64,000 nt of DNA from Guillardia theta CCMP2712 (taxonomy: Eukaryota > Protista > Cryptophyta), in assembly GCF_000315625.1 (NCBI RefSeq), contig NW_005434626.1, positions 135,448 through 199,447 of the forward strand, given 5' to 3'. The translations under genes and the position numbers were made by a program. The notes beneath the pieces are model-generated. The model did no database searches. It was not told the DNA's origin and was given only the letters and a program-made list of their open reading frames with translations. Shown in pieces: positions 48,083 through 57,400 of this stretch. Position 1 is the stretch's first letter; each line of letters starts with the position of its first letter.

Positions 48083-51000
48083 ATGGGCTCGGTCGTGGCG
48101 CTGGTTGCTCTCTCCCTGCTCCTACCGGCGCAGGTAAGCTGGATATGCTCGCTCTCAGTCATCTATGCCATCGACCTCCTCCTTCCTCTTCTTTCTGCTC
48201 GGCTCTTCTCTTCGTACATCGCGTTGCGCATCGCATTCTATGGATCATGCTGGATCACATGCCATAGCGTGGTCCAGCAGGACGTCGAGATGCTGGCTCT
48301 ATATTATCTTATGTTGCTCATCACACTGTTCTTGATGTTTTTCATTCTATGCCTGCTTCAATTATGTTCTTGTCGACGATTTGTACAAAGAGTGCGAGTG
48401 TCTTTCAACTTGTCTGTGCATGTTTGCTGTTGTGAGTTTGAGTTTCGCAGGCCTTTTACTTGCCGGGTGTTGCACCAAGAGCATTCAAAGATGGCGAGCC
48501 TGTCAAGATGAAGGTTCAGACTTTGGTGAGCACTGAGACTCCGCTGCAGTTCGACTACTATCAGGTGAAGTCTTCGACACATAACTGGAGGTCTTTTGTA
48601 ATCTTGGTCTTCCAGCTTCCTTTCTGCCAACCAAGGAGGGTCCAAGATTTGCCTGAGAACCTCGGAGAGGCTCTGGCTGGCGAGAAGGCTCACACCTCCG
48701 CTTACAAGGCGCGTGTGCGCGTGAATGAGTATTGCAAAGTCCTCTGCCGCAAGACCTACACCCCCAAGCAAATGGAAGAGTTTCAGGATTTTGCCATTCT
48801 TGAGGTAATCCATGTGAGAACCTTCTATTCCCACTCATCGTCATGTTCAGTACCGTGTGAACATGCGATTGGACAACCTCCCTGTGGCTGAGATGATCAA
48901 CTTCGCTTATGAGGACAAGCCCGACAAGACCATGCAGGTTTCAAAGAAAAGGTGATGCAGATGATTTCGAAATGATGTTGGATTTTCAAAGATTTACAAT
49001 CTTGGCTATCCCGTTGGTGGCAAGCTTGCTCCGGAAGATGGTTCCAAGAAAACGGTACATGCATAAAGGAATTACCAAGTTTGCTGATCAATGCTCAGTC
49101 GCAAAGCACCGACACATATGTCTTGAACAACCATTTGCGCTTCAAGATCAAGTATCACCCTGTTGACACTGGAGATGGCATCACCTCCGAGGGTGAGCGA
49201 GGCAACTACATTGTTGGATATGAGGTAAATCTCTGTGGATGCTGAGCCCTGCTCTGAGCCCCACCTCAGGTCATTCCTTTCTCCATCAAGCACACCTACT
49301 ACGGAAAGTGGAATCAGTCGGCCGTGCCATACCATCCCCTCACTACCTGTGCTGGAAGCCCTCCAAATGGTCGTTTCGAACGGTCTGATCACAAGTAGAA
49401 GTTGGGCTTCACTGAATCGCGATGCAGCCATCAGCCACAGGTCATTGACCCTGCTGAGGGCGGACAGGTCATCTGGACTTACGACGTTGAGTGGGAGCTC
49501 AGCGATGTCAAGTGGGCTTCACGCTGGGACGTTTACCTTCAGGTATTGTTGATAGCAAGAGTGAAAATGATCGTAATTGCTTGTTTTCAGATGACTGATG
49601 ATAACATTCACTGGTTCTCCATCGTCAACTCATTTGTCATCCTCATCTTCCTCACCGGGTAACAAGGGCTTAGTCTCACTTGAGTCTGCTATTTACACAG
49701 TTTTGCAATCAGTATTGTTGGGTTGATTATGACCCGCATTCTCCGCAAGGATTTTGCCAGATACAACGAGGTTTGTAATGTGTTGTTCGACCATTCGGAT
49801 AGTTAGTCTCACCGTCCAGGTTGCTCTTACTGAGGAAGAACTTGCGGAGGCCAATCGTGAGATGCGGTGATGTTTTCTTTGTGTGTCTGTGTGATGGGCA
49901 TCTCATCTGTCCGTACAGTGAGGAGACTGGCTGGAAGCTCGTCTACGCGGATGTCTTCCGTGCTCCTCCTTTTGGAAGACTCCTCAGTGTCATGACGGGA
50001 TCTGGGCTGCAGCTGTTCATTATGGTAGACTCGTTGTTGATAACCATATCCGAAGCAGCTAACTCTTGTCGGATAGACTATCCTGACCCTTCTGTTCGCT
50101 ACCTTGGGATTCTTGTCTCCAGCCAACCGCGGAGCACTTCTCTCCTCGGTGACTTTGATGTCTCAGATTTATGGTGTGCTCACTCGCTTTCAGGTCCTCG
50201 TCTTCTTCGTGTTGATGGGCCTTCCAGCTGGCTACATGTCGGCTCGTTTCAGCAAGATGTTCAAGGAGGTTCGATCGGGTGCTGTCAACTCGATTGCAAC
50301 CTGACATGGTTTGCAGGACAACCATTTCCAGACAGCCCTTTGGACTTCTACCATCTTCCCTGGAGTGAGTCCTTTGATTCACCCTCAATCAATCTTATCT
50401 GACTTGATGTTGGTCAGGTCTGCTTTGCCGTTTTCTTTGTGGTGAACCTTGTCGCTTGGGCGAAGCGATCGTCGACTGCAGTTCCTTTTGGTAGGCTCGA
50501 GACAATTTTGACGTGACTGAGACTTTCTTCAGGAACTCTCGTGGTCTTGGCTTTGTTGTGGTTTGGTGTTTCTCTGCCGCTCGTATTCTTCGGAGCCTTC
50601 CTGGGATACAAGAAGGACCCGATGACTGTCCCAGTGCAGACTAACCCCATCCCCCGTCAGATTCCTCCCCAGGTTTTTCTGTTGATTCTGATGTACATTC
50701 TCACTTACAAAAATAGCTCTGGTACCTGCAACTTCCATCTTCCATTGTAATGGGAGGACTTCTGTCCTTTGGAGCTGTATTTGTCGAGATGTTCTTCATT
50801 ATCTCGTCCATTTGGCAGGTGTAGGAATATTCAAAATTTCACGGCATGTCTGATCGCGTTTGCAGCACCGTTTCTATTACATGTTTGGATTCCTTGCACT
50901 GGTCTTCATCATCCTCATCGTTACCTGCGCTGAGATCACCATCGTCTTGTGCTACCTCCATCTGTGCGCTGAGGACTACCGGTAGGGAACGATGCAAGCA

Positions 51001-51373
51001 TGATGTGAATGCTTTCTGATGATGAGCAGATGGTGGTGGAGGTCATACTTGACCTCTGGTGCTGTCGCTTTCTACATGTTCCTTTATGGAGCATACCACT
51101 ACTTCACCAGAGCTCACCCTTCGGCTCACTTTGACTCTCTCGCATCGAGCGTCTACTTTGGGTAATAGATTCCGATTTCATTTTGTCCTGCGTGCGGGAT
51201 GCTGACCTTTGACTTGCAGATATCTGTTCATCTTCTGTTATGCAGTGTTTGTTTGCACTGGGTACGTTAACGTAGTGGTTTCACGGTCGGTCTGACTTGT
51301 TAACAGCTTCGTTGGGTTCTACTCGTGCTATCAGTTCATCGTTAAGATCTACAGCTCAATCAAGATCGATTAA
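48083..51373 (+). CDS. Transmembrane 9 superfamily / endomembrane protein 70 (TM9SF2/4-like), many exons
   Basis: Signal peptide, [66 protein letters not shown]-terminal IYSSIKID*. Confidence 0.95.
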
Positions 51374-51520
51374 GGGACAAGAGTTGGTCTCGGCGTTATG
51401 ACAGCCTTGAGCCGGCGTCTCTTCATGAAACATCTACTCCACCTGTGAATTTGAGCCTTTAATTAAAGAAGCAAGAGACCGCTGACGCGACTGTAAACAA
51501 TAGAGCTGGTGCCGGTAGTC

Positions 51521-53907
51521 TTAAATGGCACCGTAGAGCCTCACAGGGAGCTCCTGGCGCTTCCCCGCTCTCTTCCTCCTTGCCGCGACGATCAGGGCGA
51601 TCATGGCCACATTGAGAACCACGAGGATGGCGACAGCGGAGGTAGACGAACCAGCGATGCGCTGGAAGAAGGGAACCTCACGCACCCTCACTGAAGTCTG
51701 GGCGAGGGAGTGAAGGTTCTCGGAGAAGTAGTAGCCCGGCAGCTGGTTCTTGATGTGTGCCGGAAGGTCGTGCTTGTTAGCAAAGACACCAAAAACAGTG
51801 GAGCCAGTGTCGAAGATGACGGTGAAAGTCTGTCGAGGAGTTCCGATGCCGACGTCCATGAAGTACTGGGTTCCCTTCTGGTTCACGATGGGGATGCGAT
51901 CGACCTGCGTGAGAATCTCCTGGTGCTGGGCTGGGTACATGACCTCGTTGCCACGGAGAGCCCTAAGCTTCGCTACTGGAGCGCTGTTGAGCTCGAAGTT
52001 AGCCAGCACGTTTCTTGTGACAGGAACGTAACGCTTGTTGAGCGGAGCAATGCCGATGATGGGCTTGTGACCTGTCATATCGAACTCGACGATGTATTCC
52101 CGGAAGAAGACATCTCCGACGAGCAAGCCTTGCATGCCCTCAGGCGACGGCTGTACGCAAGTCTGATCGGTCTCGGCCAGGTACCATGAAGAGAAGGGGA
52201 CTTCCCAGGTCTTCTGCCCGATCTCCAACCAGAAGGATCTTCCCTTCTTCCAGTGCTTGGCGAAATCATCCCAAGGAACGTTCGCCAGCTGGCCTTGCAT
52301 GGAGTCCGCAGGGATGACCAAGCAGGAGGTGCCAGAATCCATGATAGAAGGAGCTCCGTAGTTGCGCTGAGCCTTGGACCTGAACTGCAGAAGCTCGACC
52401 GCTGATCCGTAGTTGTCACCAAACTTCAAGGAGGTGACGCCAACGATGAAGTCGTCGGAGGCCAACGCCGGTGTGTACCACATGGTACCTTGAGGCAGCG
52501 ATTAGCCCACAGCAAAGCACAAGTATGTTGGGTACCTGAGGTGGTTGCGGGATCGTATCCTCCAAGCTGAACCTCAGCAGCATCATCGGTGGAGAAGAAG
52601 GAAAACTTGCGCTTGAGGTTCGCAGCGTTAGTGTCCTGCAGCACCGTCAGAACGTCTGGCGCCATGCACTCTCAACACGCCACCTTGTTCTCAGCGTCGG
52701 TCATGGCAAACAACACAGGGGTCGGGAGGTCACTGCCAGCCTTGGGGAGACCGAAGCCGAGGATACCGTCGACACCATTGAAGTCAGGGCTGTTGCAATC
52801 GGTGATGACACCTGCGCTGTCGTCACGGCAGACACTAGCACACGCCGCCCGTACCGAAGGGAGAAGTAGCCTTGTAGTCGCCCATGTACACTTGATCCAC
52901 TCCAGAAAATCCCCTGAGGTGCGATCCATCCGCATAGTTGAGGTCGAAAGTCTGCAGCGAGAGGTCAAACTTGGCCCACAGGTCATCACAGGGAGGGTAA
53001 AGAGGTACCTGTGAGGTTTGGGCAACGAAGGTAGAGGACTTGCTCGCATCGAAATGCCTCGAGTCTTGGGGCCTGCGGTAGGGCGTCAACTTACATGACA
53101 CCAACATGTCTGTCATCGAACCTGTAGGCCTCATCGAAGAGCTTGTTGGACGACTTCTCATCGGCTACCTTGAACTTTCTGCTATGCATGCGAGCATGTC
53201 GGCTGACAGATGCGCACTAGAAAACGTTTCAGTCCACAAGAGACATGGCATGCATACAAGTACCTGAACCCTGAAGGATGGGTCGGTATCACAGGGAAGC
53301 TCGTCTCTGGCCATCTGCAACACAGTGAGAAACAAAAACAGAGAAGCGAAAGGGAAGGATGAAGAAGCAATGGAGTGCAAGTGAGAATTTTATCCTACCT
53401 GGTCAGCATGCTTCCTTGCAAAGTCGTCAAGCTCTCGAACGTCAGTTCGGACATCCTCCCTTGCAAAGTAGGCATTGAAGTCTGCAAACATGTAAGAAGA
53501 AACATTGATATGTTGATAGCCCGACAGCAAAGACTACCCTACACAAATCGCAAGTTGCAGCAAATGGGACCGAGATGATGAAGGCATCGAACAGAAAGAA
53601 GATGTCAAGAAGAAACGAAAGCATGACATTGGTAGGAGTCATTCACCAGAATTTAGAAAAGTGGGAGAAAAGAAATCAGCTCAACAATGATCATTCACGG
53701 CACAACTGGCAGCAACGTAGGTGAACAAAACAAGATGAACTACATGAGCAGCAAGTTACAATCAACTTGTAGCTTCGAAACCTCTCACTGGATTTGCTCA
53801 CCTCTTGCTGCTTGTCTTCCTGTCTCTTGAATCTTCGTGGGAACTGCCATGCCGACCCCCAACAGGCACGCCAGCGCCATGGCAGTCGCCAGCCCCCGTC
53901 CCACCAT
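51521..53907 (-). CDS. Pepsin-family (A1) aspartic protease, circularly permuted, with signal peptide and C-terminal TM anchor
   Basis: Signal peptide, HFDASKSSTF, flap LNYADGS, DGILGFG, QLGGYD, IMDSGTS, LLVGDVFFREYIVEFD, then YFMDVGIGTPRQTFTVIFDTGS near the C-terminus, followed by a TM helix and RRKR. Confidence 0.9.
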
Positions 53908-54428
53908 CGTGTCCCCTCTGAAGAGTCGTACCACCCTACCCCCAATTTAACGATATCTTTTCGGTGGATACCCACATATAAGGTAGGTAGGGTTCAAACG
54001 AAAACAATACACCGGTACATGGTCCCTAAAGAATTAGAACTAGAGGGTAGGGGTGGGGTAGGGGTACTAGTCAGAGTACGGGGTGATCCCTTTCGGTATA
54101 CTTTGCCCACATCCCCACTCATTCTGACTCTCACTGCCGGGCTTGAGCCAGGGCTTGAGCAGGGCTTGAGTAGAGCCTATAGTACGGCCCCCGTCACAGT
54201 GCTGGTCAGTGAGGGCCCGGCCAGTGATCGGACCGGCGGCACCGAAGGCCGGCAAGGCCGGACGGTCCGGCCAGAGCGCGGCCGAAGGCTCACGGGGGGC
54301 CGCTGGTGTTTCGACGGCGAACACTTAGTGACGTAGCACTAAGTGACTTAATTTGTTGATTCAATGACGCTGCTAGGCTACTGAGGCAGAACGGACTAGT
54401 CCTGAAGTTCACTGACATAGCCGTGAAA

Positions 54429-57400
54429 CTAGCACTTTCCCCTCCAATAAGGAGAGGTCTTGGGTACCTTCCAGTCCTCCCAGCTGAAGATCTTGTTGTC
54501 AAGGCCTTTGTACTTGAATTCCTCAGTCATCCCGTCGGAGGGAAAGAAAACCGCAAACTTGGACTTGGGCAAGAGGGGATCTTCTGCTTGCACGACCTTG
54601 CCTACGTACCAACGATGGGGTTTCTGCAAGAAGCAGTCAGTTCGAGACAAGACGAGCGATGTCAGGTTTCCTGGTACATCCGCTGGTACTTGCGAGTCAC
54701 AAGAAGGTATCGCCCCGGCTTCTTCCGCTTCTTCGCATTCTCTTCGAGATCATCTTCCCGCTCCTCGAAGAGCACACACAGGAGCTTCCCCACTTCAATG
54801 TCCTTCGAGCGATAGTCGTGGCGTTGGCTCCACCATTTCTCCATGAACTGTACCTGCTTGGGGGATAGGACCTCTTCCTCCTCGTTCACATAGATCTCTG
54901 CGTCGATCATGAACTGTTTCTCCTGCTGTCCTAATTTACAACTTGAAGGTGCTCCTGCTGGCCACTTGGCTATTTCTTGCCCCGATTCCGACCCTTCACT
55001 GTCCACTGCCAACTTTCGCTTTCGCGATACAGTCGGTCGCTGTGCTCCACCATCTTCACGAGCCTTAGAGTTTTCAGCTGCAGGATCATGGGCAGCCTCC
55101 TGTCCCTCTACCTGGTCGACCGTTTCCTTGTCCATGTGCTCGCTGCCCTGGAGCAGGACTTCACTCGGTCTAGCCGGGGCCACTCGCTTGTCGAGCATGA
55201 ATACCAGGTCGAGGTCTCTGCACATGAACAACTTTGCCTTGCTCCATTTCTTCCTGTCCTGCAGAAGGTCCAAGGCCTCGAACTCGATCTCAAAGCTGCC
55301 GAACGTTTCCTTGAAGGTTTTGGTGGCTTCCGGGAGGGAGTTCTTCCTTTCTTTAGTCACTCTGTGTGCATTCTGTAGGCCGGAGAGGATCACTCTGGCT
55401 TGCTCCTGCTCTTCTCTTGTGCTCATCAACTGATGGAGCAAGTGAACAACTTCAGCACCATCGATTCGAGAGATCTGATCTCCATTTCCGTTGATTCTCT
55501 CAAACAAAGAGCTCAATGCAAGGACAATTTCGTTAGTTTCCTCCTGATCATCTGGTATGACAGGCGTCGTCGAATCAGACCCAGCAACATTCTCACCATT
55601 CTCTACTTCACTTCTGCCGCTCATGGAATCCTTTAAGGTGCTCTCCGTTGTTTGATCGCACATATGTGAGCCCCTATTAGCTTCAATTGAGTTGGACGAG
55701 TCGTCCTGTGCGACGGACTGCAAACTTGGCACGCTGGTCGTTTGCGTTGCTTCATGAGCTGTTGAACCACCTTCTTCTTGAAGACTGTTTTCAGCTTGTC
55801 GATTTTGTTCAACTCTTGCATCAGATGCAGTAGCTGTTTGAGGAGAATCGCGCTGTAGTAGTTGACTTGGAGGACATGTTTGTGTTGATGCATCAACTCT
55901 TTCCACTGCAGCCAAATGTGGCGAGGCCTCAATATCAGGCGTAGTTGTTAAACCTTTGGAGTTCAGCATCGACGAGTTCTGATGCTGGAATGGTAAATCG
56001 TAAAACGATTTCATTTCTTCATAGACTTTCTCCAAGCTCTTCCCCAACTGCTTTCGAGCGAGCAGCTCGGATTTCAATTTGATCATCATGTCGTCTTCAA
56101 AACATTTCATGACGACGAGGAGATTGTTCTTCAAGTCTCCTCCCTCTTGAAACGCGGCATCTTTCTCCAAATTTACCTCCCTGTACACAATGTCCACCTT
56201 ACTGTCTTGAATCGACAAGAAATGTTTCTTTAAGCACTTTCGCAGCGTTTTGATCGTTTTGACATGTTTCGAGAAACAGCGCTTGAGCCTTCTCATTGCA
56301 GGGGTATTCGTTGTTTCATCGTAGGATGGGTCGAGATCACTGTCATCGTGCCTTTGACTAGCAAGATAGCAGGTCTGCCACTCATTTCTGTGATCTGCAT
56401 GATCATGATTTGTCGACAGACTCTCTGAGGTACCAGGGTACCAGGAACACAAGGTTGGAAGTAAAACAACAAATCAGATTCGATAGCAACTATGCAGCTT
56501 CTTTACCTGCATGCTGTGAAGTATCCCCTACGCACGCAGCGCTCTTGCCATTCACCACCCCCATCCTGATGATTGTGAGCTGGCTAACCCAAAGTGACAA
56601 GCAATATTTACCTGTGCGAAGTTGGACAGTCAGGAAACCCATTGATCGTTCCGTAGCACAACGAAACATTTTCTGCCCATCGTCCAGACTCTGCACAACT
56701 CATCGCAACATCCGCATCCCTTGCCTCATTATCAGCATCTATCTGACGACCATGGTGGTCTGGCTGTGATGATGAACTTGCATTCTTGACCTCGATGAGA
56801 GTTGATTCTGTACTTCCTGTATCGGCCAAGACAAGAGGGACTGGATCGCAATCAAGAATGTCTTCATTTTGCAAATTGGTATGATCAAGAGCATCATCTT
56901 CCAACGTAACGGAGAGATTGCACATGTCTTTGTGTAAGAGGTGCAGACCGATCCAATGGTCGTTTAGCAATATGGCTCGTTGAAAGAAGCTTTTGTTTGT
57001 AATCCCGTCACTGATCAGATCTTGCAGGGTCTCATGGAGCTTGTCAATCGCAATCACATCGACTTCTTCACTTCCCAGCTTGATCAGATGTCGACCTGTC
57101 ATCTTGCACAAATGTTCTTCTTGCTGCAACTCATCCCACTGGATTTGACCAGAGATAGCATGAAGAAAGGATCGAGAGAGAGCGAAGAGATGATCATCAA
57201 TCTCAACACATTTCACAACTTCACATGTGTCGTTGAGAGTTTCAGGAACATCCAGATGAACGTGAAGTTCCGTGTTATCAGCTCTCGTGACCCTCTTGAA
57301 AAATTCTTTGCAGTAGTACAAGACGTGTCTCTCTTCCTCTTTGAATAAAACCCTTTCCACTTCCACCGGGAAGTCCTCTACAACAGAATCACAAGCAACC

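What the first reader, a model, noticed from the sequence alone, without database searches (positions are those of the whole stretch)
51521..53907. Circularly permuted pepsin-like protease: the first catalytic DTG strand sits at the C-terminus
Established pepsin order: YF..IGIGTP.Q.F.VIFDTGS, then F....SSTF, the flap Tyr, DGILG, the second D(T/S)GT and ILGDVF. Seen here: after the signal peptide the spliced protein goes straight to a Cys pair, HFDASKSSTF, YADGS, DGILG, DSGTS (about 52340) and LVGDVF. Only then, after a prosegment-like linker (VAKLRALRG...DRIPIVN), comes YFMDVGIGTPRQTFTVIFDTGS (about 51800-51870) followed by a TM anchor. I found no DTG-coding exon upstream, including in the long first intron. 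Pepsin N- and C-terminal strands are neighbours in the interdomain sheet, so the permutation is structurally feasible. Both Asp residues are retained. An internal prosegment implies a different activation mechanism.
Basis: partly seen in the sequence, partly recalled or inferred. Interest (0 to 1): 0.8.

Follow-up and report, generated by a model that had tools for sequence, protein, structure and literature searches.

The report
Circularly permuted membrane-anchored pepsin-type protease
This expressed Guillardia theta gene encodes a pepsin-family protease whose first ~45 residues, including one of the two catalytic aspartates, lie after the rest of the enzyme next to a membrane anchor; a large algal protein family shares this order, and I found no paper that describes it.

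Summary

- **Gene:** nine GT-AG exons on the minus strand, 53907-51521, encoding 563 aa. The product is identical to GUITHDRAFT_110843 of Guillardia theta CCMP2712.
- **Transcripts:** contigs from three studies show all eight splice joints and begin about 10 nt upstream of the ATG. A six-frame scan of the whole 64 kb window finds no second DTG-strand piece.
- **Order of parts:** residues 110-392 match pepsin 47-326. Residues 434-480 match pepsin 1-45. The two parts cover complementary stretches of the Pfam Asp profile.
- **Structure:** two AlphaFold2 models give a confident pepsin-like body (rmsd 2.1 Å to porcine pepsin) and a confident four-strand tail.
- **Conservation:** both catalytic Asp residues are invariant down to 21% identity. 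Of the 316 relatives fetched when counted, 227 are permuted.
- **Named carriers:** all are cryptophytes (Guillardia, Hanusia, Rhodomonas, Hemiselmis, Teleaulax, Baffinella).
- **Linker:** at family level it keeps a vestige of the canonical propeptide's first strand. This fits an origin by tandem duplication followed by loss of both ends.

Not shown: the geometry of the Asp pair (model coordinates could not be read), enzyme activity, any cleavage of the linker, and whether the family occurs outside cryptophytes.

The scan has already found the same family on other pieces of this genome. Six literature searches found no description.

The parts
51521..53907 (-). Whole coding region, nine exons: 53907-53802, 53481-53399, 53314-53264, 53216-53122, 53072-53009, 52951-52855, 52811-52684, 52635-52536, 52488-51521 (stop included). 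563 aa.
   Evidence: All introns are GT-AG. The product is identical to P0152 = XP_005830094.1 GUITHDRAFT_110843. All eight joints are seen in transcript contigs of three studies.
53845..53907 (-). Signal peptide, residues 1-21.
   Evidence: Hydrophobic core followed by a small-residue cleavage-type site, read from the sequence. No predictor was run.
53139..53844 (-). N-terminal extension specific to this paralogue group, residues 22-106 (exons 1-4 with their introns). It holds a Cys pair and two low-confidence helices.
   Evidence: pLDDT is below 50 in model 1. The stretch is absent from P0018, P0022, P0057 and similar relatives.
52031..53138 (-). Protease body, residues 107-394 (with introns). 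It is equivalent to pepsin residues 47-326: the rest of the N-lobe plus the whole C-lobe.
   Evidence: Pfam Asp profile positions 40-313. VIA-align: model residues 4-286 on porcine pepsin 47-326, 252 aligned, rmsd 2.1 Å, Z 22.6.
52922..52936 (-). Flap motif YADGS, with Tyr139 equivalent to pepsin Tyr75.
   Evidence: The Tyr is invariant in alignment A3.
52325..52339 (-). C-lobe catalytic motif DSGTS, with Asp292 equivalent to pepsin Asp215.
   Evidence: Invariant in A1, A2, A3 and in the divergent set A4.
51914..52030 (-). Linker, residues 395-433. SAPVAK at 51985-51968 lies at the family position of the propeptide-like strand.
   Evidence: pLDDT is below 50 for residues 414-432. Pfam A1_Propeptide is negative.
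51773..51913 (-). Displaced N-terminal piece ('tail'), residues 434-480, equivalent to pepsin residues 1-45. It is modelled as four beta-strands.
   Evidence: Pfam Asp profile positions 1-33. phmmer matches to human pepsin 1-37 and cardosin A 6-45. pLDDT 80-96.
51800..51811 (-). First catalytic motif DTGS, with Asp468 equivalent to pepsin Asp32.
   Evidence: VIFDTGS is invariant in A1-A3, and the Asp is invariant in A4.
51581..51772 (-). Juxtamembrane stalk (residues 481-522) and transmembrane helix (residues 525-544, at 51640-51581).
   Evidence: A 20-residue hydrophobic run, modelled as a long helix. A hydrophobic stretch is present in nearly all full-length relatives.
51524..51580 (-). Basic cytosolic tail, residues 545-563, ending in YGAI (a Tyr-x-x-hydrophobic motif, 51535-51524).
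   Evidence: Read from the sequence. Similar C-terminal Tyr motifs occur in many relatives.

Best explanation
GUITHDRAFT_110843 encodes a type I membrane-anchored peptidase of the pepsin (A1) family that is a natural circular permutant. After a signal peptide and a variable extension, the chain starts at the equivalent of pepsin residue ~47. It runs through the flap, the rest of the N-lobe and the whole C-lobe (Asp292 in DSGTS), then crosses a ~40-residue flexible linker. Only then does it supply the four beta-strands that normally open the enzyme, including Asp468 in DTGS. A stalk, a transmembrane helix and a short basic tail ending in YGAI follow. Inferred: the tail inserts into the N-lobe of the same chain and completes a normal two-Asp active site, so the enzyme cannot become active until the last catalytic piece is translated, and it is tethered to the membrane through its N-lobe. 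Inferred origin: tandem duplication and fusion of a cathepsin-D-like zymogen gene, then loss of the front of copy 1 and the back of copy 2. The shortened propeptide of copy 2 remains as the linker. The event predates the diversification of the cryptophyte paralogues.
For: - Gene model: it equals the annotated protein.
- Transcripts: contigs from three studies carry all eight joints with 5' ends at 53909-53917, and raw 3'-tag RNA reads lie on the minus strand.
- Complementary profile coverage: ortholog P0001 residues 95-370 match Pfam Asp positions 40-313, and residues 430-462 match positions 1-33.
- Canonical HMM test: with an HMM of 20 canonical A1 proteins the native order gives two domains in reversed order. 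Moving the tail to the front in silico gives one colinear domain in five of nine proteins tested.
- Tail identity: it matches the mature N-termini of solved pepsin, renin, cathepsin D and cardosin A.
- AF2 models: pLDDT 85.8 and pTM 0.84 for the window protein. The tail strands are in register with pepsin strands 2-9, 13-20, 25-32 and 38-42.
- Superposition: the body fits porcine pepsin 47-326 at 2.1 Å.
- Conservation: both Asp motifs and the flap Tyr are invariant across 45 family members, and both Asp residues are invariant down to 21-37% identity.
- Counts: 227 of the 316 relatives fetched when counted are permuted. Of the 150 best library representatives, 76 are permuted and 14 canonical.
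- Tree: two deep clades, both permuted, each holding several named genera.
- Linker: the canonical pro-strand motif is enriched, with 23 of 85 linkers at p<0.05 against 4.25 expected, at a fixed distance before the tail. HMMER alignments of P0311 and P0193 extend to the 'riPLkK' start of the canonical propeptide.
Against: - Dyad geometry: model coordinates could not be read, so the distance between Asp292 and Asp468 and the exact seat of the tail were not measured. All structure aligners available here are sequential.
- Activity: no activity data exist.
- Propeptide vestige: the window's own linker is not significantly propeptide-like (PSSM p 0.79). Pfam A1_Propeptide gives no hit in ten linkers, and hhalign confidence in that stretch is low. 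The motif instances for the PSSM were picked by eye. The linkers are homologous, so the combined p-value overstates independence.
- Intermediates: no intermediate form related to this family was found.
- Sorting role: the proposed role of YGAI rests only on general knowledge of Tyr-x-x-hydrophobic signals.
Confidence: 0.85

Rival explanations
1. The fold is permuted as described, but the protein is a non-catalytic pepsin-fold binding protein, as the plant TAXI-type xylanase inhibitors are.
For: Pfam also gives weak TAXi_N matches on the tail. No activity data exist. Some divergent relatives have altered residues after the C-lobe Asp.
Against: Both catalytic Asp residues, the Gly after each, the flap Tyr and the hydrophobic-hydrophobic-Gly partners (DGILG, LVGDVF) are invariant or nearly so over a family reaching down to ~21% identity. 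That is the pattern expected of active enzymes. The TAXi_N scores are below or barely at that family's threshold, while Asp scores 119 bits against a cut-off of 19.9.
Confidence: 0.08
2. The tail does not complete its own chain. Instead it is exchanged between two molecules (a domain-swapped dimer), or the linker is cut and the enzyme works as a two-chain complex whose small chain is the membrane anchor.
For: The linker is about 40 residues, much longer than needed to join neighbouring strands. It is modelled as disordered. It carries conserved residues such as the near-invariant Lys. It retains a propeptide-like strand at family level. Cathepsin D is known to work as a two-chain enzyme (light and heavy chains in PDB entries listed).
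Against: Single-chain AF2 models place the tail with pLDDT 80-96 and pTM 0.84 without a partner. Nothing here shows cleavage or dimerisation. This rival changes the assembly, not the permutation.
Confidence: 0.1
3. This is not a permutation. It is a partial duplication or a wrong gene model, and a normal N-terminal DTG exon exists but was missed.
Against: Transcript contigs from three studies join 53802 directly to 53481 and start within 10 nt of the ATG. The previous gene on this strand ends at 54429. A six-frame scan of all 64 kb finds only one DTG-strand piece. Complete relatives with signal peptides lack an N-terminal DTG.
Confidence: 0.02

Closest known systems
Canonical pepsin-family (MEROPS A1 / Pfam PF00026) proteases such as pepsin, renin and cathepsin D
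   Same: - The same bilobal fold: 252 residues superpose on porcine pepsin at 2.1 Å, Z 22.6.
- The same two D-T/S-G-T/S catalytic motifs, flap Tyr and hydrophobic-hydrophobic-Gly motifs.
- The tail is about 50-60% identical to the first 40 residues of cardosin A and renin.
   Different: - The order of the chain: pepsin residues 1-45 come after residue 326, joined by a ~40-residue linker.
- There is no N-terminal propeptide.
- The new N-terminus lies at about the position of the pepsin Cys45-Cys50 loop.
BACE1/BACE2 (memapsins) and other type I membrane A1 proteases
   Same: - A signal peptide, a lumenal or extracellular A1 domain, one C-terminal transmembrane helix and a short cytosolic tail with a putative sorting motif.
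- BACE structures are among the fold matches.
   Different: In BACE the anchor follows the C-lobe. Here it follows the displaced N-lobe strands, so the domain is tethered through a different face. BACE is colinear and has an N-terminal propeptide (established knowledge).
Swaposin, the plant-specific insert of plant A1 proteases
   Same: It is the only circular permutation tied to aspartic proteases that my literature searches returned.
   Different: There the permuted unit is the inserted saposin-like domain, not the protease fold. The protease itself stays colinear.
Tandemly or partly duplicated canonical A1 proteins seen in the protein library (P0225, P0269)
   Same: They show the kind of head-to-tail duplication, in P0269 with a propeptide between the copies, that the permutation-by-duplication model needs as a starting point.
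   Different: They are canonical cathepsin-D-like sequences of unknown origin, not shown to be related to this family, and they may be assembly or gene-call artefacts.

Membership tests
Peptidase family A1 (pepsin family, Pfam PF00026 Asp) | Significant match to the family profile above the curated threshold | tested here: met
   119 bits against a cut-off of 19.9 for the ortholog P0001. Body and tail each pass on their own at 90.5 and 33.3 bits.
Peptidase family A1 (pepsin family, Pfam PF00026 Asp) | Two catalytic Asp residues, each in a D-T/S-G-T/S motif, one per lobe | tested here: met
   DSGTS (Asp292) and DTGS (Asp468). Both are invariant in A1-A3, and both Asp residues are invariant in the divergent set A4.
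Peptidase family A1 (pepsin family, Pfam PF00026 Asp) | Flap with conserved Tyr (pepsin Tyr75) and hydrophobic-hydrophobic-Gly motifs | tested here: met
   The Tyr of YADGS is invariant. DGILGFG and LLVGDVF are conserved.
Peptidase family A1 (pepsin family, Pfam PF00026 Asp) | Colinear order: first DTG strand, flap, rest of N-lobe, C-lobe | tested here: not met
   Profile positions 1-33 lie after positions 40-313. The canonical HMM gives two domains in reversed order, which become one when the tail is moved in silico.
Peptidase family A1 (pepsin family, Pfam PF00026 Asp) | Bilobal pepsin fold | tested here: met
   For pepsin residues 47-326: AF2 models with pLDDT above 90 over the body. VIA-align Z 22-23, rmsd 2.0-2.3 Å to renin, pepsin and cathepsin D.
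Peptidase family A1 (pepsin family, Pfam PF00026 Asp) | The two Asp carboxylates side by side at the base of the cleft | tested here: inconclusive
   The tail is modelled with pLDDT 80-96 as four strands in register with pepsin 1-45, and pTM is 0.84. Coordinates were not readable and no non-sequential aligner was on hand.
Peptidase family A1 (pepsin family, Pfam PF00026 Asp) | N-terminal propeptide (zymogen) | tested here: not met
   No A1_Propeptide match anywhere. Many relatives have no residues between the signal peptide and the domain. A possible vestige sits in the linker.
Peptidase family A1 (pepsin family, Pfam PF00026 Asp) | Acid-optimum, pepstatin-sensitive endopeptidase activity | not testable with these tools
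   Needs expression and an assay.
Natural circular permutant (as defined in the Bliven & Prlic topic page, PMC3320104) | The N-terminal part of one protein is homologous to the C-terminal part of the other and vice versa, with complementary coverage | tested here: met
   Body matches canonical HMM positions 99-372 and tail matches positions 45-88, without overlap. The Pfam coordinates are likewise complementary.
TAXI-type inactive pepsin-fold proteins (Pfam TAXi_N / TAXi_C) | Match above threshold to TAXi_N and TAXi_C, with loss of catalytic competence | tested here: not met
   TAXi_N scores 31.8 bits on the whole ortholog and 19.8-22.7 bits on pieces, against a cut-off of 30. There is no TAXi_C hit, and both Asp residues are kept.

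The most novel reading that the evidence does not exclude
The linker is a shortened internal propeptide that still gates the enzyme. The protein stays latent until the linker is displaced or cut in an acidic compartment. Cutting would give a two-chain protease whose small chain, carrying the Asp32 equivalent, is itself the membrane anchor. Under this reading cryptophytes would have replaced the canonical pepsin architecture altogether with this form.
Probability: 0.2. Interest if true: 0.85.

Novelty: new variant of a known kind. Interest (0 to 1): 0.68.

Why it matters
The pepsin fold is among the best-studied enzyme architectures, and its chain order and N-terminal zymogen mechanism are treated as constants.

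- **Fold tolerance:** a whole, conserved, expressed lineage is cut at residue ~45 and rejoined through the old termini. This shows the fold tolerates that change in nature.
- **Evolutionary model:** the family gives a clean natural test case for permutation by duplication, with a likely propeptide remnant as the scar.
- **Latency:** it raises a concrete question of how latency is achieved when the propeptide is internal and one catalytic Asp is the last part made.
- **Geometry:** the protease is held at the membrane through a different face than in BACE-type enzymes.
- **Annotation:** these genes are currently labelled only 'hypothetical protein' or 'Peptidase A1 domain-containing'.

Tried and rejected
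- **Model coordinates:** I looked for them to measure the Asp-Asp distance, but none are exposed to scripts. All structure aligners here are sequential, so the seat of the tail could not be superposed.
- **ESM Atlas shape search:** it returned only canonical A1 clusters, which says nothing about the tail.
- **Pfam A1_Propeptide:** no hit on ten linker slices.
- **hhalign of linker+tail against fish pepsinogens:** colinear through the propeptide, but with near-zero confidence there.
- **Register of the linker motif:** my first guess, KLRALRG against RIPLIKG, was dropped. The register supported by the family and by hhalign is SAPVAK against RIPLIK.
- **Taxa of the most divergent permuted proteins:** cluster look-ups and a word search with P0311 gave no organism names beyond cryptophytes. 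Occurrence outside cryptophytes stays open.
- **CIRPIN paper on systematic discovery of permutations:** it mentions aspartic proteases only through the swaposin reference, and its supplements are not held.
- **A 107-proteome survey of A1 proteases:** it mentions neither Guillardia nor permutation.

Full report
**What is in the window.** The minus strand between 53907 and 51521 holds a nine-exon gene. All eight introns are GT-AG, seven are 43-84 nt and the first is 320 nt. The 563-aa product is identical, residue for residue, to P0152 = XP_005830094.1, 'hypothetical protein GUITHDRAFT_110843' of Guillardia theta CCMP2712. It is 97% identical to a Hanusia phi transcriptome protein, P0001, which is colinear with my exons. 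The C-lobe, the linker, the displaced DTG strand and the membrane anchor lie in one uninterrupted 968-nt exon, so their order cannot be a splicing or gene-call artefact.

- Intron-free contigs from three separate studies carry exactly my eight joints (CT..AC on the plus strand). They begin at 53909-53917, about 10 nt upstream of the ATG at 53907.
- Raw reads of a 3'-biased RNA library cover the 3' end on the minus strand.
- The previous gene on this strand ends at 54429.
- A six-frame scan of the whole 64 kb with a profile of the DTG strand finds one piece only, the last exon (E 9e-31). The next best is noise at E 0.34.

**Permutation at sequence level.**
- Pfam's Asp profile is covered in two complementary stretches: positions 40-313 by residues 95-370 of P0001, and positions 1-33 by residues 430-462 (last exon alone).
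- The tail matches the mature N-termini of solved pepsin (1-37), renin, cathepsin D and cardosin A (6-45).
Nine permuted proteins each give two domains in reversed order: body on HMM 99-372 and tail on HMM 45-88.
- When the tail is moved to the front in a script, five of the nine become one colinear domain. Four of these five run straight from the signal peptide into the body; the fifth, P0226, has a leader of about 60 residues and scores slightly lower after the move.

**Fold.**
- AlphaFold2 with family-only alignments gives pLDDT above 90 for the body and 80-97 for the tail, both in the ortholog and in the window's own protein (residues 107-510: mean pLDDT 85.8, pTM 0.84).
- The tail forms four strands in register with pepsin strands 2-9, 13-20, 25-32 and 38-42, counted from the catalytic Asp.
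- The body superposes on porcine pepsin 47-326 (252 residues, rmsd 2.1 Å, Z 22.6) and equally on renin and cathepsin D.
- Pepsin residues 1-47 are exactly what the sequential aligners leave unmatched.
- That the tail fills this gap and brings Asp468 next to Asp292 is an inference.

**Family.**
- The first word search found 127 relatives. Every one that spans both motifs has DSGTS first and VIFDTGS about 177 residues later, and none has an N-terminal DTG.
- Many complete sequences go from a signal peptide straight to the conserved start.
- A profile search of 1.84 billion representatives with the C-lobe-linker-tail junction gave 242 hits at E ≤ 1e-10. Of the best 150, 76 are permuted, 14 canonical and 60 fragments. 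Among those of 400 aa or more, 39 are permuted and 10 canonical.
- Divergent permuted members at 21-37% identity still keep both Asp residues invariant.
- Named carriers are all cryptophytes: Guillardia theta (at least GUITHDRAFT_110843, 161360, 163545 and 101908), Hanusia phi, Rhodomonas, Hemiselmis, Teleaulax amphioxeia and Baffinella frigidus.
- A maximum-likelihood tree has two deep clades, both permuted. Each contains several named genera, so the event predates the paralogue radiation.
- Whether the unnamed divergent members come from other lineages could not be settled.

**Linker and origin.**
- The ~40-residue linker is modelled as disordered but carries conserved positions.
- Pfam's propeptide model does not hit it, and hhalign is colinear with fish pepsinogen propeptides only at low confidence.
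- In divergent members the HMMER alignment to canonical A1 proteins runs on to the 'riPLkK' start of the propeptide.
- A small PSSM built from eleven canonical pro-strand 9-mers scores 23 of 85 non-redundant linkers at p<0.05, against 4.25 expected. The hits lie mostly 20-27 residues before the tail.
- Caveats: I picked the motif instances by eye, the linkers are related to each other, and the window's own SAPVAK is not significant by itself.

I read this as moderate support for permutation by duplication. Two zymogen genes fused head to tail, copy 1 lost its propeptide and first ~45 residues, and copy 2 lost everything after them. Its propeptide shrank to the linker.

**How it most likely works.**
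- Shown: it is an expressed gene for a secretory-pathway, single-pass membrane protein with a complete set of A1 catalytic residues in permuted order.
- Inferred: the N-lobe and the active site can only form once the tail has been made, immediately before the anchor. The enzyme is tethered through its N-lobe rather than its C-lobe as in BACE.
- Inferred: the C-terminal YGAI, with similar Tyr motifs in many relatives, may act as a Tyr-x-x-hydrophobic sorting signal towards an acidic endosomal or vacuolar compartment. This rests on general knowledge of such motifs.
- Open: whether the linker inhibits the enzyme, is cut, or is only a tether.

**Novelty.**
- Six full-text searches found no description of a permuted pepsin fold or of cryptophyte A1 proteases.
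- The only aspartic-protease permutation they returned is the swaposin insert of plant enzymes.
- Two of the returned papers were opened and neither mentions this permutation.
- Public records call the protein 'hypothetical' or 'Peptidase A1 domain-containing'.
- Earlier notes of this scan report the same permuted family on other pieces of this genome. They agree with my reading but are not independent evidence.

I class the finding as a new variant of a known kind.

Noticed in passing
window 50541-51483, + strand: The convergent downstream neighbour is an EMP70/TM9SF (endomembrane protein 70) gene (Pfam PF02990, 58 and 30 bits on two exon ORFs). It is well expressed, has a 45-nt GT-AG intron at 51261-51305 and a poly(A) site near 51483. 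The protease transcript ends near 51472, so the two 3' ends overlap by about 10 nt. Some transcript contigs run across both genes.
   Followed up: partly
P0225 (704 aa) and P0269 (529 aa), library proteins: P0225 is a head-to-tail duplication of a complete canonical A1 domain (DTG, DSG, DTG, DSG). P0269 has a partial first N-lobe followed by a propeptide and a full domain. These are the kinds of intermediates that the permutation-by-duplication model assumes. Their origin is unknown and they may be artefacts.
   Followed up: no
P0218, P0235, P0271, P0288, P0308, P0311 (alignment A4): Divergent permuted relatives keep the C-lobe Asp but change the residues after it (for example D-S-M-Q and D-S-A-T instead of D-S-G-T). 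Their specificity or activity may be altered.
   Followed up: no
window 54429-56452, - strand: The upstream neighbour on the same strand has a 596-aa last-but-one ORF and a 73-aa terminal ORF with no Pfam match at E ≤ 0.01. It is transcribed (reads and contigs at 54375-54700) with a joint at 54623/54671.
   Followed up: no
window 53802-51521 (introns of the protease gene): Seven of the eight introns are only 43-84 nt. The first, at 320 nt, is the exception. One low-depth contig (X1 record 2, 53454-53741) reads through it unspliced.
   Followed up: no
P0098/P0101 subfamily: One deep clade of the family has a Pro/Ala/Gly-rich insert after DGIVGFG and a conserved Cys pair (C-x8-C) right after the tail. 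It also has a different cytosolic tail with two Tyr motifs.
   Followed up: no
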